Positions 1 through 24,004 of a stretch of 57,143 nucleotides of DNA are shown in pieces (the stretch's first letter is position 1; every line of letters begins with the position of its first letter). This stretch comes from Octopus bimaculoides. Its lineage: Eukaryota. The notes under the pieces are model-generated. The model searched no databases. It was given only the letters and a program-made list of their open reading frames with translations, and was not told the origin of the DNA. Made by a program: the position numbers and the translations under genes. The stretch spans positions 10,456,851-10,513,993 of the forward strand of contig NC_069009.1 in NCBI RefSeq assembly GCF_001194135.2, given 5' to 3'.

Positions 1-1247
1 TCCCACATGTTCTGTTTGAATTTTGAAGAAAGAAAACAAGTGATCATATGTTATAGTTAATTAAAATTTAATCACCAATATACTTTCCCTGATTATCTAT
101 GACTTCCTTCCATCTGTTTACAAGCTTTTTTAATTCCATCAATGTAAAACGTTTTTGGTTTCAAAGCGAGGAACTCTGAAATGTCAGTTTCAACATTCTC
201 CTGGCTTCTGAAAGTTATGTCCCCCAAATGATTCTTTAAATTGGAAACAAATTTTCGTCTAATGGAGCAATAGAGCAATGTCGGGAGAATATGGTGGACG
301 AGAATTTTTCCCAACAAAAATCTTCGATTTTCTGTGATGTTATCTTTGCTATGTGGGGTCACGCGTTTTCCTGATGAAACATCACTCGTTTTCAATTCAC
401 TAAAGCGGGTCATTTTTTTTTTCAAAGTTTGGTTCAAATACTCTATTTGCTGACAGTAGAATTGTGCATTGATTGCTTCATTAGGTGGTAGAAATTAAAC
501 GTGAATTATTTCTTTGCAATCCTACTAGATAGAGAGAAGAATCTTTTTCACATGAAGTTCCCTTCTCGGTTGGGAATGAGCTTTTTCCATTTTAGCAAGC
601 CACTGTTTTCGAGGTTTAACATTTAGATAGAAGATCCATTTTTGTCATCAGTCACAAGTTTATCCAAAAAGGGTGAAATGAGATCGCGAGAGTGGAGAGA
701 AGAGCAGGTGTCAATTCGGGTTCTCCGTTTGCTTTAGGACAAGTCATGAGACACAAATTTACCAAGTTAAGGAACCTTTCCAAGTTGTTGAAGATGACGA
801 TGAACATTTGTATGGTTTGAACTAAGCTTTATTGCCAATTCGTAATCTGATAATGCAGGATATTCTTCATGTAATGCCTCAAGAAGCTTATCATCAAACT
901 CAACTTGACATCTTATTCGAGTTTCATTTTCGAGGCTGAAATCTCCACTTCTGAATTTTGCAAACCATCTCCTGCAAGTTCTGTCATTCAAGCATATTTT
1001 CCCGTAAACTGAGTGTATGTTTCGAGTCACTTCGGCTGCAGAGTTTCCGTTTTTGTACTCTTCAGGGATCAAATTCAAAATTTCAAAAATAAAAATAAGC
1101 AACAAGAATATCCAAAAGTAACGTACTATGATCGCTTCACGCAACTCTATTTAATTGAACAATGCAATCATTACATCAATTTAAATGCCGAGCAATTTTC
1201 AGCTGCAGAAAGACATAGAATTTAATTAAATTAAAACAGATGGACAC
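1..1247 (-). mobile_element. Degenerate mariner (Tc1/mariner) transposon
   Basis: The minus-strand fragments EEYKNGNSAAEVTRNIHSVYG...CRRWFAKFRSGDFSLENE (HTH), FLDKLVTD (first catalytic D region) and SNLKNHLGDITFRSQENVETDISEFLALKPKTFYIDGIKK (C-terminus) are in mariner order, with stops and frameshifts. A degenerate TIR core tctgttt(g/t)aattt occurs at 11-23 and inverted at about 1228-1240. Confidence 0.85.
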
Positions 1248-1691
1248 ATTAGTATACATTTACCTAAAATGTACAAGAAATTAAGGAGATAGACAAAGAA
1301 CATGCTGCCTTCTCTTCAGCTTAGAATCTAGTAAGGTATCAGGAAGAAAGAATTCTTACAGAATTTTGCTTGTCACTGTTTTTTATGGGGTCAGTTTTAA
1401 TTTATAGACTAGTTATATGAAATCCTTTTATATCTAAGGCCGAGAGATGTATANNNNNNNNNNNNNNNNNNNNNNNNNNNNNNNNNNNNNNNNNNNNNNN
1501 NNNNNNNNNNNNNNNNNNNNNNNNNNNNNNNNNNNNNNNNNNNNNNNNNNNNNNNNNNNNNNNNNNNNNNNNNNNNNNNNNNNNNNNNNNAGAGAGAATG
1601 AGAAAGAGAAATACAGAGAGAGAGAAAGTGAGAAAGAGAGAGATAGAAAGAGAGAATGAGAAAGAGAAATACAGAGAGAGATAAATATACA

Positions 1692-1951
1692 GGCACAAGT
1701 GTGGTTGTATCGTAAGAAACTGTCTTCCTAAACACATGATTCGAGGTTCAGTCCCTTGCTTAACAGTTTTCTTGTGTAGACACCCACTAGACTTGACAAC
1801 CCATCTTGGTGTGCTGATGTCCACATAACTGATCGATTTGGCGAAATAGATGATCAAATATATTCTACAAGGAATAACTCCTGGGATCTAATTGTTCGAC
1901 TATAGGCGGTGCTCTATCATGACTTCAGAAAATGATTGAAGCATGTAAGAG
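1692..1951 (+). mobile_element. Degenerate tRNA-derived SINE (same family as 23331-23696)
   Basis: It shares the blocks ggc(a/g)ca..gtgg.tgt, cttgacaacc..ggtgtg and cgactat/caggcggtgctc..catg with the copy at 23331, and has a ggttcagtccc B-box-like motif. Confidence 0.6.
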
Positions 1952-2650
1952 AATAAGAGATTATATATATTAGCAATGCATATTTTCACAATCTGACTGG
2001 CATAAATCACGGCACAAGTGTTTATTCCCGCACTGATGTTCTATATATCGTTTGTTCGGAGATGAGTAGTGGCAATCTCTAGCAGCAGAGTGTTTGTCAA
2101 GGTGGAGATCAATGAAGATGGAAATCACTTGACTTTGCGGACGCGGCATTGCAGTGAAGAATCTTCTAGCAGAAAATCCACTTATCAATGAGAATAGATG
2201 TTTGCAATATATCGTACGTCATAAATTGTATTTCAAATAGATCGTTACCTGTTAAAATGTGCATGTTAGTAATTTCTACATCACATACATTTATACATTA
2301 AGACGCACAAACTCGTACACAACAAAAACTCACATACCTGCATTCCTGTATATCCTTATTTGTAACACAGGAACTGCCATACACCCAACAGGGAGCAATG
2401 GCCTATACGGTTCTATTGAAATTAGTAGTTAATATGTTACTGTTAGAATGTCTCCCAAAGGAAAGAATCTACTATCTGACAGACATCAGATCCTACACAT
2501 TGATATCTTTTTCTGTTAAATGAAAGTTTGTCAAGTGAAGCAGTGCCACAAAGCGCTAGAATTTAGGTTCATAAAATTCGATTCATAAAATATTCGTGAA
2601 GGCATTGTTGAAAAGAATTATGTTAATCGCTTTTTAATATTCTATTTCAG

Positions 2651-2808
2651 ATTAGAGGGACAACAAGACGTATTTAGTATTAATTGTTTAGTACCAAATA
2701 ATGTTACTAAAGATGAAGTTTTCAAACAAATTTCTGAAACTTTTAACACATCAGAGACATTACGTAATTTGGGAATTCAGAAAGATAAGATGGAGTTGAT
2801 TGGTGAAA
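2651..2808 (+). CDS. Exon A1, C-terminal half of SEA-like domain 1 of an adhesion-GPCR-like ectodomain
   Basis: Acceptor tttcag|, donor |gtaagt, 158 nt, phase 2 to 1. It encodes LEGQQDVFSINCLVPNNVTKDEVFKQISETFNTSETLRNLGIQKDKMELIGE and is paralogous to the exon at 12610 (28/45 aa identical from FSINC). Confidence 0.85.
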
Positions 2809-3533
2809 GTAAGTACTACTTTCCTTTCCATTTTTATGGCCATCACAATGACTATCATCACCATTATCATCTACGATGACGTCAATGCCGTCGTCAGCCT
2901 CATAATAATGTAAAACTATGAAGGATACTCACAAAAACAGAAATACAAACACACACAGATACAAATGCACACTCATACACAACACACCCAACCAAAATAC
3001 ACACCAACACTCATTTTCACCCTTTTTCACAAGTCAATAATGTGTTTTGTAATGTGTTTTGGGTGCACTCCCAAATTCATTCATGACTTCATTCATTGGT
3101 AATACAGTCTGGCAATTTCAAACGTGAATATTTGAGTGTTGTTAATATTTATCATCGGGAAACACATCTTGTCTTTAGATGGTGTGTTTCGGTAAAAGAA
3201 ATGACACCCGTTCAAGGAGACATTTTGATGAACCTTATTGTCTGGCTAACAGACATCGGGATGTAGAAGCATGCAGAACAGCAAGGTTCTAAGCAACGAC
3301 ATATCTATTCATTCTTAATTAATTCTGTCAGAGTCGCTATCGATGTTACGTCATTAACCACTCATACATGGCTATGAAACTAGGAAACAGTGCCGTACAG
3401 AGTCATTTGGCAGTTGCAGGAATATTATAACATATCTGAAATAAAGTAGAAGCTGGCTCTGCACACCTGAACAATTTATATGTGCCTTTGCCTTCATAAA
3501 TTCAAAAAACGAAATGTTTGGAAGATCCCCTCA

Positions 3534-4759
3534 CAATCAAAAGTTCATTTGGCAACATGGAATAGTATATATCTGAACTAGAGGATCAACGATACTCACA
3601 AAACAGTTACAAGTTCACACTTAGTTAACACCAATTCTAGGAAAAATCTTCACACTACCCTATAATGATATACGGTCTTTCACTATACATAGTTCCGTTT
3701 TTTACCAATAAATTTAAGCACCGATATCAGTTGAGTAGTCGCTGCAAAACAATAGCTTCATTTAGACGTGTCATTCGCTTTGCATGTAATATTGCGCGAC
3801 GATGTATAAAAATATAAACACATACGCATAGATATATGTGTATATAAATGTATGTATGTATGTATGTATGTATGTATGTATGTATGCATATCTTTGTTTT
3901 GAANNNNNNNNNNNNNNNNNNNNNNNNNNNNNNNNNNNNNNNNNNNNNNNNNNNNNNNNNNNNNNNNNNNNNNNNNNNNNNNNNNNNNNNNNNNNNNNNN
4001 NNNNNNNNNNNNNNNNNNNNNNNNNNNNNNNNNNNNNNNNNNNNNNNNNNNNNNNNNNNNNNNNNNNNNNNNNNNNNNNNNNNNNNNNNNNNNNNNNNNN
4101 NNNNNNNNNNNNNNNNNNNNNNNNNNNNNNNNNNNNNNNNNNNNNNNNNNNNNNNNNNNNNNNNNNNNNNNNNNNNNNNNNNNNNNNNNNNNNNNNNNNN
4201 NNNNNNNNNNNNNNNNNNNNNNNNNNNNNNNNNNNNNNNNNNNNNNNNNNNNNNNNNNNNNNNNNNNNNNNNNNNNNNNNNNNNNNNNNNNNNNNNNNNN
4301 NNNNNNNNNNNNNNNNNNNNNNNNNNNNNNNNNNNNNNNNNNNNNNNNNNNNNNNNNNNNNNNNNNNNNNNNNNNNNNNNNNNNNNNNNCAATCAAAAGT
4401 TCATTTGGCAACATGGAATAGTATATATCTGAACTAGAGGATCAACGATACTCACAAAACAGTTACAAGTTCACACTTAGTTAACACCAATTCTAGGAAA
4501 AATCTTCACACTACCCTATAATGATATACGGTCTTTCACTATACATAGTTCCGTTTTTTACCAATAAATTTAAGCACCGATATCAGTTGAGTAGTCGCTG
4601 CAAAACAATAGCTTCATTTAGACGTGTCATTCGCTTTGCATGTAATATTGCGCGACGATGTATAAAAATATAAACACATACGCATAGATATATGTGTATA
4701 TAAATGTATGTATGTATGTATGTATGTATGTATGTATGTATGCATATCTTTGTTTTGAA
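3534..4759. other. Assembly artefact: exact 370-bp duplication either side of an N gap
   Basis: 3534-3903 is identical by eye to 4390-4759, including the (TATG)n length, and the two flank the gap at 3904-4389. Confidence 0.85.
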
Positions 4760-5023
4760 CAGAGAATCGGAGGTTGTTATACACCACTGATCACAATGCG
4801 TTTTGTCGGCAACTTTGGAATTAGGGAAGCACCTAAGAGGGAATTGTTTAATAGTTTATTTAGTTTAAGCCCGATTTATCCTAAAATGATTACATAATAA
4901 TTATAAAGTGCGTTTAGTTACATAATCAGCGATTTTTACCTCTGTATGCGTCTATGTCACAAAATATTCTACGAAATCATTATATAGCATAGTCCTGAAA
5001 GAAACTAGCATTTCCAGACTATT

Positions 5024-5066
<43 letters not shown>

Positions 5067-5183
5067 AAACAACACTATTACCACTACTCACCATTATTAT
5101 TGTACATGTATTTTCCAGTATATAAACCACACCAACGAATTCCCTAGTAAATATTTCATATAAGCGTTTTCTTTCTTTTTCAG

Positions 5184-5298
5184 TGGTTTGTAATGAAAAC
5201 ACGACATCAACGAACAGTCATACTTTCTACTGGCCAATGACAAAAGTAGGAACTAATGTGGCCATCCCCTGTGGTGCAAATACATCAACAAGGCATTG
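5184..5298 (+). CDS. Exon B1, N-terminal part of hormone-receptor (HormR/HRM) domain 1
   Basis: Acceptor ttttcag|, donor |gttcgt, 115 nt, phase 1 to 2. It encodes (M)VCNENTTSTNSHTFYWPMTKVGTNVAIPCGANTSTRH(C), with the C...WPxT..G....PC....TRxC HormR pattern. Confidence 0.88.
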
Positions 5299-5931
5299 GT
5301 TCGTTTGTATTGTTTTACTTCTTCCCAAATTTCGATCTTTCATTGAGCGAGTGTTCTATGCCAAAGTAAATAATACATCTAAATAGATTAAGACGAGAGA
5401 ACTAATGTGTGTCTGATCAAAACATTTAACACTGCGGTTTTATATCTTACGCAGGATGTGACATAATTTTTGTCATGGTGAATCGAGAAAGACTTGCTTT
5501 CTCCCGAATATTAGAAAAAAGTTTTATAACATTTGTTGTGAAGATTCAATTGCCTGGACTTTCATTTAACAAAAGAAATGTAAGGGAGGATACACATAAC
5601 TAAATGCAGCTAATTCTATTGAATTCAGGGTAACGTTATTTATTCAATGTAATTATTTACTGTAGAACAACACGTTTTGTCACTATATGGTTACTATTGG
5701 GTGGAGAGCGAAGAAAGCAGATCATCGTGGAGCCTGACTCAGCATATTGACATTTGTGTCGCTTCTACTACGCTATCCCAAGTGCTAAGCATATAAAATG
5801 TTCCACTTGGAGTCTGAATTTCATAAGTTTTAACACAAATTATACAGGTTCAATTTATCAAATCTATGCAGGTATAAGTAAACAAGCAACCTTCTCTGCT
5901 GCCGATGATGATGATGTGGATGATTGTGATG

Positions 5932-5963
<32 letters not shown>

Positions 5964-6339
5964 GATGATGACTAAATATGATTAGGTGATTTCTTCACTC
6001 ACCTAGGAGTAATACCATGGTGCTTTAATACAGTCTCAACCATATCGTTCCGACATCTTATGTTAAAAATGTCTTAATGGCAAAATACAATAAATAAAGG
6101 CAGATGTTTCAATTGTTTACTCTAAAGTTTAGTTAGATCTTTTCAAACAGCTTTGAGGATACTAAGTGGAGTAAATAACAGATTACTGACAAAATGATTT
6201 GTAGTTATCTTCGTTCTACTAAATTGTGATTTTATACACCAACCAGTTAATAATTGTTCTTAAATTTCTCTGAGATTGATGAAATACAAATGCATAATGA
6301 AGTCTAATAATATTTTATATTTATTTCGTCTTTCTCTAG

Positions 6340-6458
6340 CACGGCGGTAGACCTAGAAATGCAAAAGTGTTCCCCATTTACTGGCATTTGGCAAGAACCA
6401 CAGATGTCTCAGTGTTACATTTCAGGGGGCACCACTGAAAAACCAAATAACCCTACAC
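6340..6458 (+). CDS. Exon C1, C-terminal part of HormR domain 1 plus linker
   Basis: Acceptor ctctag|, donor |gtgagt, 119 nt, phase 2 to 1. It encodes TAVDLEMQKCSPFTGIWQEPQMSQCYISGGTTEKPNNPT, containing the C..F.G.WQEP....C HormR motif. Confidence 0.88.
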
Positions 6459-7169
6459 GTGAGTATTTCGAAATACAGATACAGTAGGAGTAGTAGCAGG
6501 GAGAACAGGAGGTGGATATGTATATGTGAAATATTTGAATTTCGTTACGACCACTTTATGCGCATGTGTTTGAATACGTGTGTATTCATGTCAAGTCACT
6601 TATCGGAGCATGCGCTTTGCATATCTTCGCTGCATCCACTTTTTACATGTATATATGATCGGGTCGTCCCGGGAAAACCTACAATCATTCTAAGCTGATG
6701 ATAACAATTCATACATATAACAGGGTGCATCCAGGTTTCTGAGTACAATCTTTGGCTCTATACGAAATCCGATGAATAATAACAAAAACCTGCGAAGAAT
6801 TCTGATTACAACGGAGGTCCGGCTGCTCCTAGGTGTAACAGACAATGACTAAGTCTAGTAACTGTAGAGGAAGGTACGGCAGACCAGAGACCTTTGTTTG
6901 CATACTATTTGCCATCTTATTCGCGCATTTTCCAGGCTTTTATCAACCCTATCATTTCTCTGCTGCCATTAACAAAGGATATGAAATTGCGTCGTGTTCA
7001 TGCGTTTGCCAATTATAAATGAACTAAATTAATCTGATGAAAGTTTCTCATGCCTCTATACAACTCACAACGCTGTCATTATAAAGATATTTATCTTTAT
7101 AGTTTTATTTTAACACTTGTTTATAATTGTAATGATATGTTATGTTATTATTTTTGTATCTCTTTATAG

Positions 7170-7264
7170 GCTGGACGAGTTCCTTTCTATTTCATCTGAT
7201 TTACGATTCGACATTTAAGAACATCAAGGATGATATAAAAACTGCTGAAAACGTATCTAGAGCT
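7170..7264 (+). CDS. Exon D, N-terminal part of SEA-like domain 2
   Basis: Acceptor tctttatag|, donor |gtgagt, 95 nt, phase 1 to 0. It encodes (R)WTSSFLFHLIYDSTFKNIKDDIKTAENVSRA, and its phases fit exons C1 and E. Confidence 0.72.
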
Positions 7265-7303
7265 GTGAGTAGCCATGTCTTCTTTGACTCACATAATCTG
7301 TTT

Positions 7304-7357
<54 letters not shown>

Positions 7358-7370
7358 GTCTCTGTCTCTC

Positions 7371-7438
<68 letters not shown>

Positions 7439-7917
7439 TCAGATAGATACAAGCACGTATTCATTTGCTTCTTCCAGTTATTTGACTGCTGTCATAACTG
7501 GAATTACTGTCTGTCCGGTATCCATATATCTCCGTCTGCATTCTTTCTACATATATCTATCATAACATTTTGGAATGAGGATGATCCCGGAATGGAAAAT
7601 CGGCCCTACATTTGGTTCTTGAAATCCAGTACTGTGCTCTGATTTAAAACCATTTGGGTTTCTATTTCTAGCAGGTAAAGTCCGGCTGATTAACGCCTCC
7701 TGGTTGATGGTTGTTACATGACGTTCGAGATCAAGGTGGAGATAAGCGACATTCGCGCCCTTAATTTTACTCGAGATAGTTTCTAAACAGTTGGAATTCA
7801 ACGTGCGAATGCAACAATAGAATTATTGCATTACAGAAATAATTCTCATCCGCCACGCGGCTATATACACATTATAAATGTATTTTAGTGATATCATTCA
7901 GGCCTGTTTAGTTTTGA

Positions 7918-7962
<45 letters not shown>

Positions 7963-7964
7963 CA

Positions 7965-8006
<42 letters not shown>

Positions 8007-9314
8007 GACAATTAGATGAACTGAGGTAGGAATAAAGGTAAAAAATGTCATTATTTTGAGTTATTAAAGATATTTACAAGCATACCGGTTTCGTATACAG
8101 ACAGATACAGGTCAGTGGACACATAGAAACGTGTGCGAGGCATCTTAATCCTAATTTCCTAACTTTTCCCTTCCATCAATTTTCACAGAACACATCTACA
8201 CAACAAAGAATGAATAAAGAGGCAGTTTTCATTAATAAATATCTTCCTCAATTAAATATAAACACATGACCTCATATAGAACCCCACTAATCTTCCATTT
8301 AATATCACTAACCCCCATACATATTTTAGGGAGTATGTATATGTACCACAATATAACCGAACTTTGGGTGTAATTCACTATGATCTAATATATACAGTAC
8401 ATACCAGTTTAAGTCTCGTCCCGGTTGCTAAAATTGATAACCACTGTCCAGTATTGCCTACCATTAACTTGTCATGGCAACGTCATAATGTGATAACAGT
8501 GTCACATGAACAGACATTCTGAGAGATATTGCACAGACTAGCAAAAGATTAGTAAGTTTGTCATGTGTGAACATTTAGTACCTAGAAGTGTTTTGAGGGA
8601 AAGCGCCCTTACCACCACCAAGAATGGAGTACATTATAGACTTTTATTGAAATCCAATTAGCTTATCATCCAATATATGCAACGTTTCGTCAAATTGGTT
8701 CACTGGGGTAACAAGCAAGATGGTAATAGATCGGCAGGCAGAAATTGCCTCTCTATGTATAGGATATATGTGCACGTGTCTGTGTGTGAATTTCTCTATG
8801 CAATGGATAGGACACCTGTGAACAATTATTGTCAAATTACTCTCTCCCTGCTTAAAGCTACGTATTCCTCACGCCCATTTTTCTTTCCCTTCCACAGCGT
8901 CTTAAAAATGATTTATGTCTATGAGAAATAATTAAAAGGAAAATACTGTTACGTATGCATATACAGATATGAATATATACAAATATGTGTGTGCGCTGGT
9001 GTGTGTTTGCATATATATATGTATACAATACGGTCTTTCATGTATTACATTTCTATGTATGTGAATGTATGTATACACACATTTATACATGTGTGAATAT
9101 ACTCAGAGCGAATAGAAAAGGGAATGAGATTTAATTAACCAAATCCATCTACTAATATTAAACTAACTCAAAATGGATTTTTATGTTCCGTGACATTTTA
9201 CTAGCAAATGTGATATTTGATTCTAACTCATAACAAATAAATCTGTATTCTCAATCCATTATTGAGTCATGTCCCTTAATTTGCCCATAGATAACGTATA
9301 AATGACTATTTCAG

Positions 9315-9367
9315 ATGGAACATGAATTATTAAACTTGACAGGAGCATTCGAAGTTGAATATTGTGG
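9315..9367 (+). CDS. Exon E, middle of SEA-like domain 2
   Basis: Acceptor tttcag|, donor |gtaagt, 53 nt, phase 0 to 2. The only open frame is MEHELLNLTGAFEVEYC(G), and it bridges exons D and A2 in frame. Confidence 0.75.
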
Positions 9368-9675
9368 GTAAGTAAAATGTCATTTAACACGTTTATTAAA
9401 ATTTTGTTTTTTATTTGCGATGAAAATATTCAAGTGGTCTATGTTTTGTTGATGCATTAAATGTTACAATAACAATGCTGTACATGTGACAAATAAAAAT
9501 CAAATTTACGATTTCAATCAACCATCCGTCTGTAATAATATTATAAGAAGCGCAGATATATATATTTATATATAAATTTATATAAATAAGGATAGGATCG
9601 ATATTTAAATGCCGATTTTATCTGATGGCAGCATGGAAATAAAAACCTTCAAAGGTAATAATTATTTAAAATTAC

Positions 9676-10017
9676 AATTTAGAGTATCTAAGAGATGCCA
9701 CCACGCTGGAAATAACAGTGAACCTTGACTCTTAAGCCACATTAAATGTTCATACAGCATCAGTAGAGAAGACAAAAAGACAAAATAAACTAGCTAAAGA
9801 TTAATGGATAATTCCATTTCTGGCTCTGCATGAGAAATGCTCTTTCATCGTCTGTGGAATATACTCAGAAAACACATAAATCATCCAGTAATCTTTTGCT
9901 AGTTTATTTTCTCTCTTTGTTTTCTCTCCTGGTGCTATATGAACATTTAATGTGGTTTTAGAGTCAAGGTTTGACTGCTATTTCCAGCGTGGTGGTATCA
10001 CTTAGATACCCTAAATT
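9676..10017. mobile_element. Fold-back element/MITE with about 120-bp inverted arms
   Basis: The left arm aatttagagtatctaagagatgccaccacgctggaaataacagtgaaccttgactc...aaataaactagc (9676-9794) is reverse-complementary, with mismatches, to 9898-10017. Confidence 0.8.
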
Positions 10018-12609
10018 NNNNNNNNNNNNNNNNNNNNNNNNNNNNNNNNNNNNNNNNNNNNNNNNNNNNNNNNNNNNNNNNNNNNNNNNNNNNNNNNNNN
10101 NNNNNNNNNNNNNNNNNNNNNNNNNNNNNNNNNNNNNNNNNNNNNNNNNNNNNNNNNNNNNNNNNNNNNNNNNNNNNNNNNNNNNNNNNNNNNNNNNNNN
10201 NNNNNNNNNNNNNNNNNNNNNNNNNNNNNNNNNNNNNNNNNNNNNNNNNNNNNNNNNNNNNNNNNNNNNNNNNNNNNNNNNNNNNNNNNNNNNNNNNNNN
10301 NNNNNNNNNNNNNNNNNNNNNNNNNNNNNNNNNNNNNNNNNNNNNNNNNNNNNNNNNNNNNNNNNNNNNNNNNNNNNNNNNNNNNNNNNNNNNNNNNNNN
10401 NNNNNNNNNNNNNNNNNNNNNNNNNNNNNNNNNNNNNNNNNNNNNNNNNNNNNNNNNNNNNNNNNNNNNNNNNNNNNNNNNNNNNNNNNNNNNNNNNNNN
10501 NNNNNNNNNNNNNNNNNNNNNNNNNNNNNNNNNNNNNNNNNNNNNNNNNNNNNNNNNNNNNNNNNNNNNNNNNNNNNNNNNNNNNNNNNNNNNNNNNNNN
10601 NNNNNNNNNNNNNNNNNNNNNNNNNNNNNNNNNNNNNNNNNNNNNNNNNNNNNNNNNNNNNNNNNNNNNNNNNNNNNNNNNNNNNNNNNNNNNNNNNNNN
10701 NNNNNNNNNNNNNNNNNNNNNNNNNNNNNNNNNNNNNNNNNNNNNNNNNNNNNNNNNNNNNNNNNNNNNNNNNNNNNNNNNNNNNNNNNNNNNNNNNNNN
10801 NNNNNNNNNNNNNNNNNNNNNNNNNNNNNNNNNNNNNNNNNNNNNNNNNNNNNNNNNNNNNNNNNNNNNNNNGCTGGAGATAGAGACGAAAAAGATATTA
10901 ATTTAATTAGTAGTTATAAGTAAGGGACACAGAAAGTTCTAAAGGTGATAAGAAGTGTTATGTTGAAGGATTGCAGGACTATCCTTTGTTAGGCGGGCGA
11001 GTTATTCGGTTGAAAGTGATGGGTAAAGAAAATAATAAAAAAGTGAGAAAATAGATGAATGGGGGGGATCGTAAAAGAAAAAAAGTATCGGGGTCATTGA
11101 ATGAAAAGCAGAAAGTGGATAAACTGTCAGATAAAAGAAGCCAGAGATTTAGTATTGAATAGCAGAAGTAGAGCTAGCGAGTTTTGCAAGTGGCTAGAGG
11201 AATGATATGATCAATACAGTGATGATCGTAAGGTAAGTAGGAGATCGATCGAGAAATGGAAGTTTATTAAATCAGAATGAAGAGGATGTGTCTATATATC
11301 GCCCCTTGTCTGTAGGCCCGGTTAAAGATGCTGAGTGTAGAGTGTAAGGGTATGTGATAGATAGCGAGCTTCATGGGGGTGGGGAGAGAAAGGAGCTAGG
11401 ATGAGATAAAATAAAATTAATTAATCTTATTTGAGAGGAGTGAATGTTCTGCATTGTATAATCCGCAATGTTGTCTCCTGGAACTGAGAAATACGGAGTT
11501 CAAGTCTCACTAATTGTTCCTCTCTTGTATTTGATGAGTGTATTATCTAATGGCACATATGTATGTATATGAGTATAAGATGTCCCTTAAGATATAATGC
11601 ACCTTTGCCTCCCTAAAATGACATTTACCACCATACAGTAAACTGGGAACCAGTCAGTCTGATGAAACACATCTTCATTTGCAATAAATTGTAGTCATAA
11701 ATTGCATTTCAAATGGATCAACAGTTATTCAACTCTATATGTTAGTAATACGTACAACATATGTCCATACACACACACACACACACGCACACACTCACAC
11801 ACACACACACAAACATAAAACACACACACAAACACAAATACATAAATACATGTATATATGTATGTCATCAGTTTCATTTCTGTATTTCTTGTCGATAGAG
11901 AAAGAGCCGGACTCTAACATAGATTCAAGGCTCCTTCATTGGAACTTTGATCAATATCATCTAGGTATTTGTGCATATGTGTGTGTGTGTGCAGCATGTA
12001 TGTATGTATGTATGTATGTATGTATGTATGTATGTATGTATGTATGTATGTATGTGCTTAAAACATTCAAACGATTGCTATTGTACACGGAAACAAATAC
12101 CCCAATAAACCGATTGGTGAATCGCCTCGAATTTATGGTACATATGGATCCGCCTGGGGATTCATCTATTACTTTTCGCATGGAGTGTTGAATTGGCTAT
12201 TCACCTACTTATCTTCAATCCCTCATTCTATCTTTATACATGTGTGCGTATATGTGCATATGTACCAACATGCATCTATATCTTGGTTTGTAACATAGGC
12301 ACAATCACCTACCCCACAGGCAGGAATGGCTTATGTGGTTATGTTGAAGTAATTAGTAATTTACTGTTAGAAATGCTCTCAAAATAAATAAATTCTGACT
12401 GACATGCATCAGAATTTATACATTGATATCCATTTTCAGTAAACAAAAGTTTGTTTAGAGAATAACAGTGGATATTTATATTCTAGTTATTAGGACAAGA
12501 TCCTCCTTGTTAAATTTCCATGTAATTAAAGGAGCTGATGAATGTTGTGAGAACTAATTATGTCTTTTTTAATTTCTTTTTGAATTTCATTTCTCTTTTT
12601 AATTTTCAG

Positions 12610-12755
12610 ATTAGAAATATTTAGTATTAATTGCTCAGTACCAGATGAGATTACTAAAGAACAAGTTTTGAAACAAATGTTTAGAACTTTTAATACTTCA
12701 CAAACATTACGTAACTTGGGAATTCAACTACGTTATACGAAATTAATTGATGAAA
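12610..12755 (+). CDS. Exon A2, C-terminal half of SEA-like domain 2
   Basis: Acceptor ttttcag|, donor |gtaagt, 146 nt, phase 2 to 1. It encodes LEIFSINCSVPDEITKEQVLKQMFRTFNTSQTLRNLGIQLRYTKLIDE. Confidence 0.85.
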
Positions 12756-13169
12756 GTAAGTAGTGCATTTCTTACTATTTTTATGGCATCACAATCGCCA
12801 TGGCCATCGCAATCGTTATAAGTGTCATCATTTCCACCATTTCCACTATCGTTTCCGTCGACTTCGTCATCAGCACCAAATTAGGATGATGCTATTGAGG
12901 CCACACGCGTGGTCACACACACGCATCCCCTCCCCGCACACGCATCTAGTTGTCTACCTATTTTTCAACCGATCATTCTTTCAGTAAATGAATAATACGT
13001 TTTCTAATATTCTTTATAATTTTCTCTTTCGCTACTTTCCATTCCAAGCTGTTCATGGTTCATTTAATTTTAGCTATGAAAATTACCTCAGACAATAAAC
13101 CTTTTCTACTTCTCCTGTATATGTCTAAGTCTTATGAAGCCAAAGTAATAGTGTAGGAGCCATTATATA

Positions 13170-13320
13170 TTTATAGCGCGACCAGCAAGCAGAATCGTTA
13201 GCACTACGGCTGTAATGCTTAGTTGAATGTCGACTTTCTTTACCTTCAACATTCAAATTTCACCGCCGAGTCGATAAGTACTAGTTGAGTAATAGGCTTG
13301 ACAAATTCGACAATTCCTTC
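13170..13320 (+). mobile_element. Degenerate SINE fragment
   Basis: The blocks gcagaatcgttagcac...aatgcttag...ttcaaatttcaccgccgagtcgataagtactagttgagta resemble, from memory, a tRNA-derived mollusc SINE. This was not database-checked. Confidence 0.4.
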
Positions 13321-13399
13321 TCCACCAAAGTCTCAATCCTAAATATGTATTTCTTCCTAGCTCTCCTGTGTGACCCTTCTGTCCGGCATTCGACATGAT

Positions 13400-13580
13400 A
13401 GATCGCTAGTCACTACACAGTCTTTATTTTGTCTCCTCGTTTCTTTATGTGTTCCTTTCTGCGGAAGAGCGAAGGCTCGAAATGTTAAAGCTTTTTCACT
13501 TTCCGAGCGTTAAACTAATACACCCGTTTGTTGTCTACATCACTTGCCTTCGTCTTTTGTTTTGTTGTGAATTCTCCCTA
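13400..13580 (+). repeat. Dispersed repeat, three copies (also about 22980-23106 on + and 33780-33930 on -)
   Basis: All copies share the core ctg(cg/tc)gaagag(c/t)g(a/t)ag(g/t)ctcga(a/g)a(t/c)gt(t/a)aaag...ttccgag...atacatc/ccgtttgttgt(c/t)taca. Confidence 0.7.
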
Positions 13581-13588
13581 CACACACA

Positions 13589-13651
<63 letters not shown>

Positions 13652-13820
13652 TGCTAGTTAATGATTATAGAATGCGTTTTGTTATCCGTTCTTGTGGTTT
13701 GTTAAATATTAAGAAAATTGTATCTTAGTATGAATCTATATCCCTTCATTATGGTGATAATAACTAACATATCGGCCTCAAATGAGCCAGCAAACTAAAG
13801 CTACTGTACTCCTATTGTTT

Positions 13821-13891
<71 letters not shown>

Positions 13892-14251
13892 ATGCTGCTG
13901 GTGAAGGATAGATAGAAATACAGCTTCTTGCCCAGTCACCGTTATCTATATCCATATGTATTTTCTAGCATATATAATCCACACACCAGTGAATTCCTTG
14001 ATATATATATATATANNNNNNNNNNNNNNNNNNNNNNNNNNNNNNNNNNNNNNNNNNNNNNNNNNNNNNNNNNNNNNNNNNNNNNNNNNNNNNNNNNNNN
14101 NNNNNNNNNNNNNNNNNNNNNNNNNNNNNNNNNNNNNNNNNNNNNNNNNNNNNNNNNNNNNNNNNNNNNNNNNNNNNNNNNNNNNNNNNNNNNNNNNNNN
14201 NNNNNNNNNNNNNNNNNNNNATACCATACACATGTTTTATTTGTTTTTCAG

Positions 14252-14366
14252 TGGTTTGTAATGAAAGCACAACATCAACAAACAATGGCACTTTCTATTG
14301 GCCAATGACAAAAGTAGGGACTAATGTGACGATCCCATGTCATGCAAATGTCGCAACGAGACACTG
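14252..14366 (+). CDS. Exon B2, N-terminal part of HormR domain 2
   Basis: Acceptor ttttcag|, donor |gttcgt, 115 nt, phase 1 to 2. It encodes (M)VCNESTTSTNNGTFYWPMTKVGTNVTIPCHANVATRH(C), 32/39 aa identical to B1. Confidence 0.88.
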
Positions 14367-16164
14367 GTTCGTTTGTAATGTTTTATCTCTACTAAAATTT
14401 TGAAATTTGAAGTGACATCCTATTGTAAGAGAAAGTTACATTGTATCTTATAATAATTGTGCTTGGCATTACGTTGCTTAGCCCGTCGGTATCGCCATCA
14501 CATGATTAGAGACAAAGGAGAAAATGAAGAAGACAGTAAAAGGACAGAAAGAAAAAAGGTAGAGAGATAAAAAGGGAGAGAAAGAAAAAGACGGAGACAG
14601 TAGCATTCATGACGTAATTATAACGATTTCATGTGATCAATTGAAGAGGAAGACAGAACAAAGGGGAGAAAGAAAAGAGGGCGAGAGAAAAATGGATAAG
14701 GCGAAGAGTGAGACATAAAGAGGTAGACAGAAAAAAGAGAGCAAAAGAGGATAAGGTGAAGAGTGAAACAGAAGGAGGGAGGAAGAAAAAGTGGTGGGAG
14801 AGAAGCATCCATGACGTGTGGTGGGGGAACGTAATACATTTTACGTGGTTACAAAAGTTAGTTGGAGGTAGAGGGGAATTAGAAATATAATGTCAGCAGA
14901 GTGGTGATGTTCTGATGGTGAGATTAAAGAAAGGCAGAGGGGGAGAGAAAATGGGATAGAAGGGGGAGAAAGAGATGAGGGAGAGATGATGATTACGGTG
15001 GCGGTATAGGCGGAGGCGGTGGTGAGTGAATAGTGAAATATGTATTTTTTACTTCAACTAAGTTCACCTGTCACTGAATGCATGCGCATAAGTGCATTAA
15101 TGTGGCAGATATGTTATAATATGGAGATGTTTTTTTTTGTATATAGGAAAAATGGAAAAATAAGATTGAATATCTATTTTATGAGTTTTGTGTACTAAGT
15201 CTATAAATATATAAAACGTATATATAAACTGTATTAAGTAATCATCGTATACTACGTTCTTTCACTTGTCAATGAATAGCTGATGAATGATTATCTTTTG
15301 ATAAAAAGAAGACACAACCTACGCTATCAGGTTCTTGTATTAAGCTTTCAGAATTAACCCAATAAGTTTACTATGAATTCCGTGAAATATTCACGAGGTT
15401 CCGCTTGTAGTAAATAAAACACTTAGAGAGACAAAGATGATAGAATTAATGTCAGTCACTTAAAATCCTTTAACACTGATATTTTACATTTTACACCATG
15501 ACATTATTTTGCCGTGAAATAGCAACCAACATTTATTTTTTTGCTGATGTTAGACGAAAGTTTAAAGTATTTCTTGTAATTATTCCTGTAAGTGCCAGAA
15601 TATGACAAAATAAATGTAGGGTAACAAGCATATATCTATACTCAACCAATAGCATTTATCACCAATTCTAATGATTTCAGAGTAATATCATTTATTCAAT
15701 TTTATGATGTACTTTAGAGCAATACGATTTGTAACTATATGGTTACCATATGGCGGTGAGCGAGGAAAGCAGATCACCGTGGGACCTATCTCATAGTGGT
15801 TACTATTCTTTCATATCTCCCACGTTATTCCACATGCAAGCATCTAAGTTGTTATTGTTGAAGGGTGATTTTTATAAGTTTTAAGACAAAGGTGGAACTA
15901 CTCCAGTTTGTGCCTGTAGAAGAAAATATACGTAAATCTCTTGCTAATGATGATGACAACAAACTATATATTATATTGATTTTATGGATAGGAATTTAGA
16001 ATAAATGATCGATATTTGACGGAACACATCCCTGTATTTATCCTTGTTCCACTAGATTATGAGTTCAAATCACGATCGAGTCATTGTTTATCACACATTT
16101 CTCTAATAATGATGAAATGAAAATGCATAAACACGTTTGATAATATTTGATATTTATTTTTCAG

Positions 16165-16328
16165 CTCTACCAGAAATGTGGTACATCCCGAAATGCCCAC
16201 AAATCAGTATGTGACATTACGAAAGTGTTCACTATTCTCTGGTGTCTGGCAAGAACCAGACATGTATCAATGTTACAATACAGAGAAGATCACTGAACAA
16301 CTAAAGAACCTCACAAGCGTAGACATCG
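16165..16328 (+). CDS. Exon C2, C-terminal part of HormR domain 2 and probable start of GAIN domain
   Basis: Acceptor ttttcag|, donor |gtaaag, 164 nt, phase 2 to 1. It encodes STRNVVHPEMPTNQYVTLRKCSLFSGVWQEPDMYQCYNTEKITEQLKNLTSVDI. The amphipathic helix after the last Cys is where GAIN begins in adhesion GPCRs (inference). Confidence 0.85.
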
Positions 16329-17507
16329 GTAAAGGTGNNNNNNNNNNNNNNNNNNNNNNNNNNNNNNNNNNNNNNNNNNNNNNNNNNNNNNNNNNNNNNN
16401 NNNNNNNNNNNNNNNNNNNNNNNNNNNNNNNNNNNNNATACCTATGACAATGTAATACTTGCGGGAACTATTTAGAGGATGCATGTGTATGGCTCTGTGT
16501 ATGTCTACAACCAGTGTCTTTCCAGATTGTCTTATTGTTTGTGAACGTCCGTGATTATGCGTGAGGTGAACGTTCATGCGTTTTCGAATTTATGTTTGAA
16601 ATGAGAGGAAATGTTTACTGGAAACTTGTTCATGCATATATGTGTGTGTGTCTGTCTGTATGTGTGCAGATGTGTGCATGCGAGAGTATCAATATGAATA
16701 TATATATCTCGCCGTGTATATCATGTACGGTTCTTACGTCTCCCTCCCCACGGATTAACATCATCGACTTTTCTTCTACATCATCCTTGTGTACGCTTTG
16801 TTCTTCGATATTTTGTTGTTTGCATTCTTGAAATTCTTTTTCATCTGCCAGTATTTTTCGTCTCCTTCTCCCCCTCCTCCTCCACCTCCTCATCCTTCTT
16901 CTTCATCATCATCTTCTTCTTCTTCTTCTTCTTCTTCTTCTTCTTCTTCTTCTTCTTCCTTATCCTATTTCTTTTCGTCTTCTTCACCTTCTTCCTCATC
17001 TTCTTCTTATTGTTATTCTGTTTCTTTCTTCTATCTATTATTCGCCTTTTATTTTCTACCTTTTCCTTATTTCCTTTTTCTTTCCCGTCTTTGAATTCTC
17101 CTAGATTTTTCCTGCAGCTTCATTATTGTAACCCTATTCCTCTCGTTCTATTCATTTAGCTTCCTTTTCCTTTTCCTTTTTATTCTCCTCCTCCTCCTTC
17201 TCCACCTTCACCATTTATTTTACAATCCACAATCATCTTTCAGTCCGACGTTTCAAATTATTTTCGAATTATGCTTTGGCACATTCCTTGTTTCTTTTCT
17301 CTTTTATCGACAATCACATCGTTGCATCATCATCATCAGCATCATCATTATCATCATTATCATCATCAACAACATTACCATCATCATTATCATCTGCAGT
17401 AACTTGAAATCCGTTAAATTTATCATCATCAACATATTCATTATAATCGTCTTTAGAAACGGCACTAGCTCCGCAGTCGTACTCCGAACCTTCCTAATCA
17501 TAAACAC

Positions 17508-17564
<57 letters not shown>

Positions 17565-17909
17565 AATTATCATCATTAGTATCGTTATCACGGATTTTAT
17601 CTCCATCATATGCTACAATATCATCTTCATCAACGCTATCACCATCTCTCTTTGCATAGCCTTTTCCTTTTAATTTACCCACACTACCATCAACACCTCC
17701 ACAACCACCCCTCTCTGCTTCTTCATTCTGTCATTCTCAATATTAAGATCATCTCCATTCTCATCTACTTTCCTGCTCCGCAAAAAAGTAATTGTATAAC
17801 AATATTTTAACATTTCATCATGAAACACTTCTATACATTTTCTAATCATCTAAAATTCTATTTCATAGTCATTTCGTGGATAATAATATTTTACAATATT
17901 ATGTTACAG

Positions 17910-17981
17910 ATATTTGGATGAAAGTAATATCGACATAATTGAAGTAGGGATATTCGATAATCTGACCAGTTTAACATACCT
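17910..17981 (+). CDS. LRR exon L1
   Basis: gttacag| 72 nt |gtaagt, phase 2/2. It encodes YLDESNIDIIEVGIFDNLTSLTY(L), a typical-class 24-aa LRR with the ladder Asn replaced by Ser. Confidence 0.88.
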
Positions 17982-19809: not shown

Positions 19810-19880
<71 letters not shown>

Positions 19881-20358
19881 TATTTATTTATTTCTATTAT
19901 TATTATTATTAATTTTGTTGTTCATCTTCTTTATCATTTTCTATATATTCTTCGTCTCTTCCTTCGGTTTCTAATTTATACTTCCTTTTTTCTCTCCGCC
20001 CCTCCTCCTCTTCTCTCTCCTCCTCCTCCACCACTAACTTCTCCTCCTCATCATCATAACATCTTCGTCATCAAAACTACAACCAAATATTTTTCTCCTC
20101 TGCTTCATTATCTTATTCATTACTACGACCATCACATCTTCCACCAGCATTATGCACCTCAACTTCCTCTGCATTATCATCGTAATCATCATCAGCAGCA
20201 ACAACAGCATTATCAACATTATCATCACCATCATCATCGTTACCATCATCATCATGAAACTAATTATTAACCTTTTCTACTTTACATCATTTCTCACAAG
20301 TTATTCTTTAGCTAAAATGTTCTATACAATTCCTCATTATGTCTATTTTATGTTCCAG

Positions 20359-20430
20359 ATCATTGAGTTCTAATAATATAACAGAAATCAAAGCAGACAC
20401 CTTCCGAAATCTCTCCAGTTTAACATATCT
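20359..20430 (+). CDS. LRR exon L2
   Basis: gttccag| 72 nt |gtaagt, phase 2/2. It encodes SLSSNNITEIKADTFRNLSSLTY(L). Confidence 0.9.
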
Positions 20431-21150
20431 GTAAGTTGAATCAGTGTTAATTTTTAGTATGTCATTGACAATATATTTCTACATATGTGGTGTATTCCAA
20501 TACTTTATTATAAGCACATTCACCCGTCTTTCCAAAGATGTGTTATCATGTATATAAATCTGTGAGTGTGGGCTCATTTCCTATATATGGTACATATGAC
20601 AGAGTGATACTTGCAGGGAACAATTTCGTGATTGCTTGTGTATTTCCAAAAGGTGTGGTATTGTATTGCGAACGTCTGTGAATATGAGTATGGGTATATT
20701 TATGAGTGTTCGGATTTATGAGTGTGTAGCAATTGAGGGGAAAACGTTAGTGGAATCTTGTTAAATCTCATATGTACGCCTTTATGTGTGTGGATTCTGA
20801 ATGTGAGAATATCAAAAGGTATGTACATTCCGGCGTGTATATCATGTACAATGCTTACGTCTCCGTCGTCAGCACTGATAACAATCATCGAGTCTTCTTC
20901 TTCTTCTTCTTCTTCTTCTTCTTCTTCTTCTTCTTCTNNNNNNNNNNCCTTTTCTTCTTCTTCTTCTTCTTCTTCTTCTTCCTTTTCTTCTTCTTCTTCT
21001 TCTTCTTCTTCTTCTTCTTCTTCTTCTTCTTCTTCTTTTTCCTTTTCTTCTTTCTGCTTCGTTTCTAATTATCCTTTCTCTTCCTAAAATTCTTCACCAG
21101 TAACTAAATAAAACGCATCATACTTCATCGTCGGCATCATAACATTATTT

Positions 21151-21182
<32 letters not shown>

Positions 21183-21239: not shown

Positions 21240-21287
<48 letters not shown>

Positions 21288-23967: not shown

Positions 23968-24004
<37 letters not shown>

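What the first reader, a model, noticed from the sequence alone, without database searches (positions are those of the whole stretch)
2651..16328. Adhesion-GPCR-type ectodomain with a tandemly duplicated SEA-like + HormR module in one reading frame
Seen: eight exons with compatible phases (2-1-2-1-0-2-1-2-1) splice into one stop-free frame, [SEA1 half]-HormR1-linker(YISGGTTEKPNNPT)-SEA2-HormR2-helix(ITEQLKNL). Paralogous exons lie about 9-10 kb apart and flanking intron sequence is still alignable (about 2330-2520 vs 12255-12455, and 5650-5850 vs 15700-15900). Established: vertebrate ADGRG6 has a single SEA-HormR-GAIN order. Inference: an internal duplication of about 10 kb doubled the stalk module, and only the second copy kept the GAIN-entry helix while the first became a linker. 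A repeated SEA-HormR unit is not an architecture I recognise.
Basis: partly seen in the sequence, partly recalled or inferred. Interest (0 to 1): 0.8.

Follow-up and report, generated by a model that had tools for sequence, protein, structure and literature searches.

The report
Duplicated SEA-like/HormR exon cassette, octopus receptor
A roughly 9-10 kb piece of an octopus adhesion-receptor-family gene, carrying the exons for a SEA-like domain and a hormone-receptor (HormR) domain, was duplicated in tandem long ago and both copies still read in frame, but nothing here shows that they are spliced into one messenger, and the rest of the receptor is missing from the window.

Summary
Eight AG/GT-bounded exons on the + strand join into one stop-free frame of 321 aa (not 331). 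Exons A/B/C occur twice, about 9-10 kb apart, with alignable intron flanks.

All three assembly gaps are intronic. One (3904-4389) is spurious: identical 370-bp sequences flank it. B1-C1-D-E lie on one ungapped contig, so the new HormR1-to-SEA2 adjacency is real sequence.

Both HormR copies match Pfam HRM over nearly its full length (E 5e-4 and 1.5e-4, below the gathering score). The D-E-A domain is modelled as beta-alpha-beta-beta-alpha-beta. It links to Pfam SEA only through distant family members.

The locus belongs to the octopus-expanded LRR - Ly6/uPAR-like - SEA-like - HormR - GAIN - 7TM family ("ADGRG6-like").

The duplication is old. Copies share 65% aa identity with dN/dS 0.40, and the closest O. 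vulgaris locus is a single A1-type/B2-C2-type mosaic unit.

Not shown: co-splicing, or receptor identity of this locus. The window holds no GAIN or 7TM exon, a 100-N gap follows C2 by 9 nt, and no database protein contains these exons.

Annotated relatives with SEA-HormR-SEA' give precedent for the C-to-D splice, but none of the 170 relatives examined in this family has two HormR domains. I rate it a new variant of a known kind, of moderate interest.

The parts
2651..2808 (+). Exon A1: C-terminal half of SEA-like domain, copy 1 (LEGQQDVFSINCLVPNNVTKDEVFKQISETFNTSETLRNLGIQKDKMELIGE)
   Evidence: AG/GTAAGT, phase 2 in and 1 out. 79% nt identity to A2. 89.6% to the A exon of O. vulgaris L001, against 81.1% for A2.
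5184..5298 (+). Exon B1: first half of HormR, copy 1
   Evidence: AG/GTTCGT. 82% nt identity to B2. With C1 it matches Pfam HRM at E 4.7e-4.
6340..6458 (+). Exon C1: second half of HormR, copy 1, ending in a proline-rich linker (TEKPNNPT). The new GTGAGT donor lies 12 nt upstream of the ancestral donor position, in the same phase 1.
   Evidence: Read-through of the donor would stop after 8 codons.
6459..7169 (.). The 711-bp interval holding the duplication junction (end of unit 1 joined to start of unit 2)
   Evidence: Ungapped sequence. No tail-like exon and no AATAAA/ATTAAA signal. Homology to the O. vulgaris pre-D intron starts only at 7149.
7170..7264 (+). Exon D: start of SEA-like domain, copy 2 (WTSSFLFHLIYDSTFKNIKDDIKTAENVSRA)
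   Evidence: AG/GTGAGT, phase 1 in and 0 out. tblastn and BLASTN matches to family D exons.
9315..9367 (+). Exon E: SEA-like domain, copy 2 (MEHELLNLTGAFEVEYCG)
   Evidence: AG/GTAAGT. 78-83% aa identity to family E exons.
12610..12755 (+). Exon A2: C-terminal half of SEA-like domain, copy 2
14252..14366 (+). Exon B2: first half of HormR, copy 2. The acceptor lies 31 nt after gap 14016-14220.
   Evidence: 93% nt identity to the O. vulgaris B exon.
16165..16328 (+). Exon C2: second half of HormR, copy 2, plus the first turns of GAIN subdomain A (ITEQLKNLTSVDI). The phase-1 donor GTAAAG lies 9 nt before a 100-N gap.
2201..6452 (+). Duplicated genomic block, copy 1 (exons plus alignable intron segments)
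   Evidence: Self-BLASTN, collinear at 66-82% identity.
11678..16310 (+). Duplicated genomic block, copy 2
   Evidence: Self-BLASTN.
3534..4759 (.). Assembly artefact inside intron A1-B1: a 486-N gap flanked by an exact 370-bp repeat (overlapping contig ends left unmerged)
   Evidence: 3534-3903 = 4390-4759 at 100% over 370 bp.
16338..16437 (.). A gap of exactly 100 N straight after C2, probably a scaffold join. The 3' continuation of the gene (GAIN, 7TM) is not in the window.
   Evidence: No GAIN or 7TM tblastn hit anywhere in the window. In O. vulgaris the first GAIN exon lies 1.8 kb after C.

Best explanation
The window holds the middle of a gene, or gene remnant, of the octopus-expanded adhesion-GPCR family. 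That family's ectodomain runs LRR - Ly6/uPAR-like - SEA-like - HormR - GAIN.

A five-exon cassette (D, E, A = SEA-like domain; B, C = HormR) is bounded on both sides by phase-1 introns. It was duplicated in tandem with a period of about 9-10 kb. The window starts inside unit 1, so D1 and E1 lie upstream of it.

Shown:
- The duplication is real sequence.
- It is older than the divergence from the closest O. vulgaris locus.
- Both copies keep open frames, splice sites and the HormR cysteine/tryptophan skeleton.
- Copy 1 lost the GAIN-entry helix and gained a strong in-phase donor.

Inferred: default exon-by-exon splicing joins C1 to D. That would give a stalk of SEA-HormR-linker-SEA-HormR in front of the GAIN domain, lengthening the receptor's membrane-proximal stalk by a second, diverged module. 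The GAIN and 7TM exons would lie beyond the scaffold join at 16338.
For: Exons, phases and single frame:
-.

Duplication:
- Collinear blocks, including intron sequence.
- B1-C1-D-E sit on one ungapped contig, and the A1-B1 join is backed by a 370-bp contig overlap.

Constraint on both copies:
- 65% aa identity, dN 0.21, dS 0.52, dN/dS 0.40.
- Exon nt identity is 73-82%, against 66-68% for alignable intron.
- In simulations with substitutions only, a 130-codon ORF survives 15-20% neutral divergence with probability 0.01-0.04.
- All splice sites are intact. There is no poly(A) signal or tail exon between C1 and D.

Age of the duplication:
- The O. vulgaris A exon and its flanks are closer to A1 (89.6% exon, 78% region) than to A2 (81%, 64%).
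- The O. vulgaris B and C exons are closer to B2 and C2 (93% and 87%) than to B1 and C1 (80% and 78%).
- Copy 1 vs copy 2 is the largest distance in every region.

Precedent for a C-to-D splice:
- Annotated models with SEA-HormR-SEA'-tail, mapped onto their loci in O. vulgaris (L003) and O. sinensis (L004).

Domain identity:
-.
Against: - There is no transcript evidence of any kind.
- No protein among the 32 close hits or the 170 relatives examined is more than 92% identical to any of these exons (that maximum is over 36 aa; over the whole query the best is 78%). None in the family has two HormR domains.
- The window has no GAIN, GPS, 7TM or tail exon.
- The next + strand exons downstream are phase-2 LRR exons, which C2 cannot join in frame.
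- Copy 1 is the faster-evolving copy in B and C. It has an 11-residue loop deletion and an Ala-to-Ser change in the near-invariant AxRxC motif.
- dN/dS 0.40 is an average over both lineages, so it does not exclude recent loss of function in one copy.
Confidence: 0.45

Rival explanations
1. Relic or truncated copy. The two units are not in one functional messenger. A1-B1-C1 would be the 3' end of a truncated upstream gene or pseudogene, either ending by read-through after C1 or simply unused. D-E-A2-B2-C2 would then be the only used stalk, or the whole locus would be a decaying fragment of the tandem gene cluster.
For: - No database protein contains these exons, although many paralogues from several octopus species are annotated.
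- There are no GAIN or 7TM exons in the window.
- The cluster is full of partial models and transposons.
- The closest O. vulgaris and O. sinensis models start at the Met of exon E.
- Read-through of C1 gives a stop after 8 codons.
- Copy 1 B and C evolve faster than copy 2.
Against: - Copy 1 keeps a 130-codon ORF, six splice sites and the HormR Cys/Trp skeleton, despite an age at which neutral sequence would carry stops (p about 0.01-0.04).
- dN/dS is 0.40.
- The strong GTGAGT donor in C1 is in phase.
- There is no poly(A) signal in the 711 bp after C1.
- The lack of a 3' end can be explained by the 100-N join at 16338.
Confidence: 0.3
2. Alternative cassettes. Both units are functional but used alternatively. 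Isoforms would carry either unit 1 or unit 2 (upstream exon to D2 skipping unit 1, or C1 to the GAIN exon skipping unit 2), giving two stalk variants from one gene. All the relevant junctions are phase 1.
For: - The cassette is phase-1 symmetric, so every combination stays in frame.
- Family models already show several in-frame skips, such as C to tail and A' to tail.
- Both copies appear constrained.
Against: - C1 has lost the residues that begin GAIN subdomain A and replaced them with a proline-rich segment. A direct C1-to-GAIN join would truncate that helix.
- Skipping five well-defined exons is not the default outcome.
- No data on splicing exist.
Confidence: 0.2
3. Assembly artefact. The apparent duplication would come from mis-scaffolding, or from a haplotig placed in tandem.
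For: - The region has three gaps.
- One gap is demonstrably an unmerged overlap.
- Gaps of exactly 100 N suggest scaffold joins.
Against: - The copies differ by 18-34% in nucleotide sequence and carry indels. That is far beyond allelic divergence.
- The diagnostic C1-D adjacency is inside one ungapped contig (4390-10017).
- Order across the other gaps matches both copy 1 and the O. vulgaris locus.
Confidence: 0.04

Closest known systems
Octopus 'adhesion G-protein coupled receptor G6-like' cluster. This is probably part of the octopus-specific adhesion-GPCR expansion 'group 3' of Ritschard et al. 2019 (PMC6408891). Examples: O. vulgaris P0002 and P0033, O. bimaculoides P0035 and P0038.
   Same: - Exon-for-exon homology of D, E, A, B and C, with up to 74-78% aa identity overall and 93% nt identity for exon B2.
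- The same intron phases.
- The same tandem-cluster, TE-rich genomic setting.
   Different: Full members have one SEA-like plus one HormR domain, followed within about 2 kb by GAIN exons and then 7TM. Here the cassette is doubled and no GAIN or 7TM is present in the window.
Annotated models with SEA-HormR-SEA'-tail in O. vulgaris and O. sinensis (P0001, P0007-P0009, P0011, P0012, P0019, P0020, P0034; loci L003 and L004)
   Same: A C (HormR) exon is spliced to a downstream second D exon, so a second SEA-like domain follows HormR.
   Different: - The second unit there is D'-E'-truncated A', followed directly by a short terminal exon. There is no second HormR and no GAIN or 7TM.
- Their SEA' is most like the SEA of the same gene, so that duplication is independent of the one in the window (sequence comparison).
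Vertebrate ADGRG6 (GPR126) and ADGRG4: SEA-HormR-GAIN-7TM (6v55; review PMC13197933)
   Same: - The same order of a ferredoxin-like/SEA domain, HormR and GAIN.
- The family GAIN is the best PDB sequence match to ADGRG6 (E 9e-10).
   Different: - The N-terminus is LRR plus Ly6/uPAR-like, not CUB-PTX.
- Vertebrate G6 and G4 have single SEA and HormR domains.
- There is no Foldseek hit to 6v55 or to any SEA structure in the top 50.
ADGRA2/ADGRA3 (GPR124/125): LRR-Ig-HormR-GAIN-7TM
   Same: - N-terminal LRR array and a HormR next to GAIN.
- Precomputed Pfam hits to GAIN_ADGRA3 (PF26588) in several family members.
- One O. bimaculoides member is named ADGRA3 by its source.
   Different: The octopus family has a Ly6/uPAR-like domain and a SEA-like domain between LRR and HormR, where ADGRA has an Ig domain.
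P0101, an unnamed 722-aa protein from an ENA assembly with ten tandem HormR domains
   Same: It shows that serial HormR domains exist in predicted proteins (Pfam HRM E 9e-35, 10 stretches).
   Different: It has HormR-only repeats, with no SEA-like spacer and no LRR. Its organism and context are unknown, and it is not a member of this family.

Membership tests
Adhesion GPCR (class B2) | GAIN domain with GPS motif immediately N-terminal to the 7TM | tested here: not met
   No GAIN or GPS exon anywhere in the 57 kb by tblastn with 170 family proteins, down to E 50 for the 32 close ones. Only the first ~13 residues of GAIN subdomain A are present, at the end of C2. A 100-N gap starts 9 nt after C2, so the domain may lie outside the window.
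Adhesion GPCR (class B2) | Seven-transmembrane domain (Pfam 7tm_2) | tested here: not met
   No 7TM exon in the window. Homologues P0002, P0032, P0035, P0038, P0040, P0049 and P0075 have it.
HormR / HRM domain (PF02793) | Match to the HRM profile, with the conserved Cys and Trp pattern (C...WP.T..G...C...A.R.C...G.W...D.S.C) | tested here: inconclusive
   - Copy 1: E 4.7e-4, 20.9 bits. Copy 2: E 1.5e-4, 22.5 bits. Both cover positions 7-64 of 66 but fall below the 26.2-bit gathering score.
- The doubled peptide scores 28.4 bits in total.
- The near-invariant family columns C, W, C, C, W, C are all present in both copies. Copy 1 has Ser for the AxRxC Ala.
- The position directly before GAIN fits.
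SEA domain (PF01390) | Sequence match to the SEA profile | tested here: inconclusive
   - The window's D-E-A2 peptide has no Pfam hit at E<=10.
- 3 of 15 family domains hit PF01390, best E 4e-4.
- The Argonauta member P0048 hits at E 0.013, covering model positions 4-100 of 106. All are below the 26.4-bit cut-off.
SEA domain (PF01390) | beta-alpha-beta-beta-alpha-beta sandwich fold | tested here: met
   AF2 model of homologue P0006 (62% identical to the window module): strands 51-60, 90-98, 102-111 and 143-145, helices 70-84 and 116-135, pLDDT 81-96 per 10-residue block. Foldseek returns only generic ferredoxin-like folds (E >= 3e-3) and no SEA entry in the top 50. The spliced window peptide itself could not be submitted.
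SEA domain (PF01390) | G/SVVV autoproteolysis motif between beta2 and beta3 (present in many but not all SEA domains) | tested here: not met
   The hairpin reads FEVEYCG-LEIFSINC in the window and has no GSVVV-like motif (direct reading).
ADGRG6 orthologue | N-terminal CUB and pentraxin domains | tested here: not met
   Full-length family members carry LRRNT/LRR/LRRCT and a Cys-rich Ly6/uPAR-like domain instead. The window itself does not contain the N-terminus of this gene.
Octopus LRR-type 'ADGRG6-like' expansion | Exon-level homology of the SEA-like and HormR cassette, with shared intron positions and phases | tested here: met
   - All eight exons match family exons.
- Exon boundaries coincide with those mapped in L001, L003 and L004.
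- All 32 close hits are Octopus proteins.

The most novel reading that the evidence does not exclude
An adhesion GPCR whose membrane-proximal stalk carries two SEA-like-HormR modules in series before the GAIN domain. The doubling would have been kept under purifying selection since before this locus diverged from its O. vulgaris counterpart. The first HormR would have been converted from a GAIN-docking domain into a free-standing stalk element. To my knowledge this would be the first adhesion GPCR with two HormR domains, and a natural experiment on how stalk length and HormR-GAIN packing affect receptor activation.
Probability: 0.3. Interest if true: 0.55.

Novelty: new variant of a known kind. 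Interest (0 to 1): 0.38.

Why it matters
HormR sits directly against GAIN in every characterised adhesion GPCR, and the HormR/GAIN/7TM layout predates animals (PMC13197933). A receptor with a second, free HormR and a second SEA-like domain would show that this stalk can be extended in modules. It would also provide a diverged HormR that is no longer held in place by packing against GAIN.

More modestly, the locus shows how the octopus-specific adhesion-GPCR expansion diversifies. Phase-symmetric exon cassettes are duplicated in tandem (SEA-like+HormR here; SEA-like alone and the Ly6-like domain in relatives). They can apparently be collapsed again by recombination, as the mosaic O. vulgaris unit suggests.

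If the locus turns out to be an unexpressed fragment, it is an ordinary by-product of a fast-evolving tandem gene cluster.

Tried and rejected
I used the 62%-identical homologue P0006 instead. A 40-sequence alignment with distant relatives gave pLDDT 83.

2. Foldseek against the PDB with both models gave no SEA, HormR or 6v55 hit, only generic ferredoxin-like folds at E >= 3e-3. The fold class is supported but SEA membership is not.

3. A PDB sequence search with the single module gave nothing. A search with a SEA-like-only profile gave only noise.

4. I looked for GAIN, 7TM or tail exons in the window at E up to 50 and found none. I also tested whether the downstream LRR exons could continue the frame from C2. 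They cannot: they are phase 2 and C2 ends in phase 1.

5. Apparent extra family sequence at 4-1053 and 48404-49792, which matched the O. vulgaris locus, turned out to be transposon copies. One is a mariner-like ORF at 96-1150 (-). The other is a segment present in the O. vulgaris D-E intron but absent from the window's D-E intron.

6. The exact-sequence look-up for P0008 found no record.

7. I ran no further search on the LRR exons, because the answer would not bear on the finding.

8. I could not determine the species of the window. The gap style resembles the O. bimaculoides locus L002, and O. vulgaris and O. sinensis give orthologue-level exon identities. That is inference only.

Full report
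**What the window is.** It is 57,143 bases at 35% G+C with 20 runs of N. It is rich in microsatellites and transposon fragments. All 32 close protein relatives of the finding come from Octopus species. The source species is not given. The pattern of variable-length gaps resembles the O. bimaculoides locus L002, but that is inference.

**Observation.**
- A1 2651-2808
- B1 5184-5298
- C1 6340-6458
- D 7170-7264
- E 9315-9367
- A2 12610-12755
- B2 14252-14366
- C2 16165-16328

Each has a pyrimidine tract and AG upstream and a GT donor downstream. Intron phases are 2-1-2-1-0-2-1-2-1.

Self-BLASTN gives five collinear blocks between 2201-6452 and 11678-16310, at 66-82% identity with E down to 5e-41.

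**Gaps.** All three gaps inside the finding are intronic.
- Gap 3904-4389 is flanked by an exact 370-bp repeat (3534-3903 = 4390-4759). Two contig ends overlap and the gap is spurious. After correction the A1-B1 intron is about 1.52 kb, matching the 1.50 kb of A2-B2.
- B1, C1, D and E lie on one uninterrupted stretch (4390-10017). The only new adjacency the hypothesis needs, HormR exon C1 followed 711 bp later by SEA-like exon D, is therefore directly read sequence.
- The joins across 10018-10872 and 14016-14220 rest on scaffolding. They agree with the exon order of copy 1 and of the O. vulgaris locus L001.
- A gap of exactly 100 N begins 9 nt after the C2 donor. A second such gap is at 47878-47977. 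These look like scaffold joins of unknown length.

**Domains.**
- Each B+C pair matches Pfam HRM over almost the whole model (E 4.7e-4 and 1.5e-4). Both are just below the gathering score. The doubled peptide passes it at 28.4 bits.
- Columns near-invariant across 40 family members (Cys, Trp, Cys, Cys, Trp, Cys) are present in both copies.
- A family profile aligns to the GAIN domain of zebrafish ADGRG6 (6v55, E 9e-10), beginning exactly at the 'NITSEDI' segment encoded at the end of exon C. C2 therefore ends with the start of GAIN subdomain A. C1 has replaced it with TEKPNNPT.
- The D-E-A peptide of the window has no Pfam hit.
- An AlphaFold model of P0006, which is 62% identical over the module, reached pLDDT 83. 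It shows beta-alpha-beta-beta-alpha-beta for this domain, at pLDDT 81-96 per 10-residue block.
- Foldseek finds only generic ferredoxin-like folds.
- Distant members of the same family (Argonauta, Aplysia, an unnamed transcript) link the domain to Pfam SEA at E 4e-4 to 1e-2, below threshold.
- 'SEA-like' is therefore reasonable on fold, position and weak transitive similarity, but membership is not established.

**Family.** Full-length relatives read signal peptide - LRRNT/LRR/LRRCT - Ly6/uPAR-like Cys-rich domain - SEA-like - HormR - GAIN/GPS - 7TM. One also has a death domain. They occur in O. bimaculoides, O. vulgaris, O. sinensis, Argonauta hians and, more distantly, Aplysia californica. 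This is probably part of the octopus-specific adhesion-GPCR expansion with LRR domains and tandem clusters described in PMC6408891. The source names 'ADGRG6-like', 'ADGRG4' and 'ADGRA3' are similarity labels. The N-terminus is unlike any of those three.

**How the duplication works.** The cassette D-E-A-B-C is entered and left through phase-1 introns. A tandem copy is therefore automatically in frame, and phase compatibility is not extra evidence for co-splicing. The C1 donor (CAC|GTGAGT) lies 12 nt upstream of the position homologous to the C2 donor, where C1 now reads TTCG|AAATAC. The phase is preserved.

**Age and constraint.**
- Copy 1 and copy 2 are 65% identical in protein, with dN 0.21, dS 0.52 and dN/dS 0.40.
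- Exons are 73-82% identical, against 66-68% for the alignable intron.
- The closest O. vulgaris locus (L001, protein P0002) has a single cassette followed by GAIN exons 1.8 kb after C.
- The A exon and flanks of L001 are closer to A1 (89.6% exon, 78% region) than to A2 (81%, 64%). Its B and C exons and flanks are closer to B2 and C2 (93% and 87%) than to B1 and C1 (80% and 78%). Copy 1 vs copy 2 is the largest distance everywhere.
- The duplication therefore predates the divergence of the two loci. The O. vulgaris unit looks like a recombinant, collapsed A1-type/B2-C2-type mosaic (inference).
- Over such a time a neutral 130-codon frame would acquire stops. Simulated survival is 0.01-0.04 at 15-20% divergence, with substitutions only. 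Copy 1 has therefore been under coding constraint for most of its history.

**Precedent and uniqueness.**
- Ten predicted proteins (annotated models from O. vulgaris and O. sinensis among them) have SEA-HormR-SEA'-short tail.
- In their loci (L003, L004) the C exon is followed by D', E', a truncated A' and a terminal exon. There is no second HormR, GAIN or 7TM. That duplication is independent of the one here.
- L004 also has the Ly6-like exons in three copies.
- Among 170 relatives, including representatives of a 15-billion-protein collection, none in the family has two HormR domains. Only an unrelated unnamed protein with ten HormR repeats does.

**What is missing.**
- No GAIN, GPS, 7TM or tail exon occurs in the window.
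- After the 100-N gap come nine 72-nt LRR exons on the + strand between 17.9 and 42.4 kb. They are phase 2, so C2 (phase 1) cannot join them in frame. They probably belong to another family gene or to a misplaced scaffold.
- No database protein carries the window's exons. The best match is 92% over 36 aa (B2), and 78% is the best over the whole query.
- No transcript data could be consulted.

**Verdict.** The genomic observation is correct and the duplication is real and old. The domain calls are right for HormR and plausible for SEA-like.

Whether the doubled module reaches a protein is open. My estimates are:
- about 0.45 for a doubled stalk in one messenger
- about 0.3 for a relic or truncated copy
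- about 0.2 for alternative use of the two units
- about 0.04 for an assembly artefact

It is a new variant within a known, fast-evolving receptor family and is of moderate interest.

Noticed in passing
window 3534-4759: The 486-N gap is flanked by an exact 370-bp repeat (3534-3903 = 4390-4759). This is an unmerged contig overlap, so the local sequence is about 856 bp too long.
   Followed up: yes
window 17910-17981, 20359-20430, 22186-22257, 28239-28310, ~32606-32677, 35778-35849, 36248-36319, 37906-37977, 42358-42429 (+): Nine single-LRR exons of exactly 72 nt, all phase 2 with AG/GT. They sit in tandemly duplicated intron blocks (for example 35485-36104 vs 37613-38263 at 84%). They look like the 5' part of another family gene. 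No signal-peptide/LRRNT exon, LRRCT exon or Ly6-like exon was found in the window.
   Followed up: partly
window 16338-16437 and 47878-47977: Two gaps of exactly 100 N, unlike the variable-length gaps elsewhere. They are probably joins between original scaffolds, so the order and orientation of the three blocks 1-16337, 16438-47877 and 47978-57143 are uncertain.
   Followed up: no
L001 (O. vulgaris OX597842.1) 12249-22648 compared with window 2150-16337: The single SEA-like/HormR cassette of the closest O. vulgaris gene is a mosaic. Its A exon and flanks match the window's copy 1, and its B and C exons and flanks match copy 2. This is the pattern expected if a doubled ancestor collapsed by unequal recombination, or from gene conversion.
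   Followed up: partly
L004 (O. sinensis CM016887.1) 7903-24774; L003/L004 second SEA-like units: The two-exon Ly6/uPAR-like domain is present three times in tandem in L004. A partial second SEA-like unit (D', E', truncated A') follows HormR in both L003 and L004. Cassette duplication recurs in this family.
   Followed up: partly
P0002-P0005 and L001 923-6111: The closest annotated models start at the Met of exon E and so lack a signal peptide. Ly6-like and D exons lie just upstream in L001, which suggests these are 5'-truncated gene models.
   Followed up: no
P0101 (722 aa, ENA assembly, unnamed): A predicted protein made of ten tandem HormR domains (Pfam HRM E 9e-35, 10 stretches). Its organism and context are unknown.
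   Followed up: partly
window 96-1150 (-), 26550-26954 (-), 39779-40156 (+), 52607-56098 (+): Transposon remnants:
- 96-1150 (-): a mariner/Tc1-like transposase, whose DNA is 81.5% identical to an intron segment of L001.
- 26550-26954 (-): a reverse-transcriptase-like ORF.
- 39779-40156 (+): an integrase-like ORF.
- 52607-56098 (+): a non-LTR retrotransposon with a long reverse-transcriptase ORF.

The segment 48404-49792 matches a probable insertion in the D-E intron of L001.
   Followed up: partly
window 42963-42995 (+): A short open stretch, VWKEPEVTRCH, resembles the HormR motif GVWQEPDMSQC (E 0.3-3). It lies about 530 bp downstream of the last LRR exon. It is probably chance and was not pursued.
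   Followed up: no
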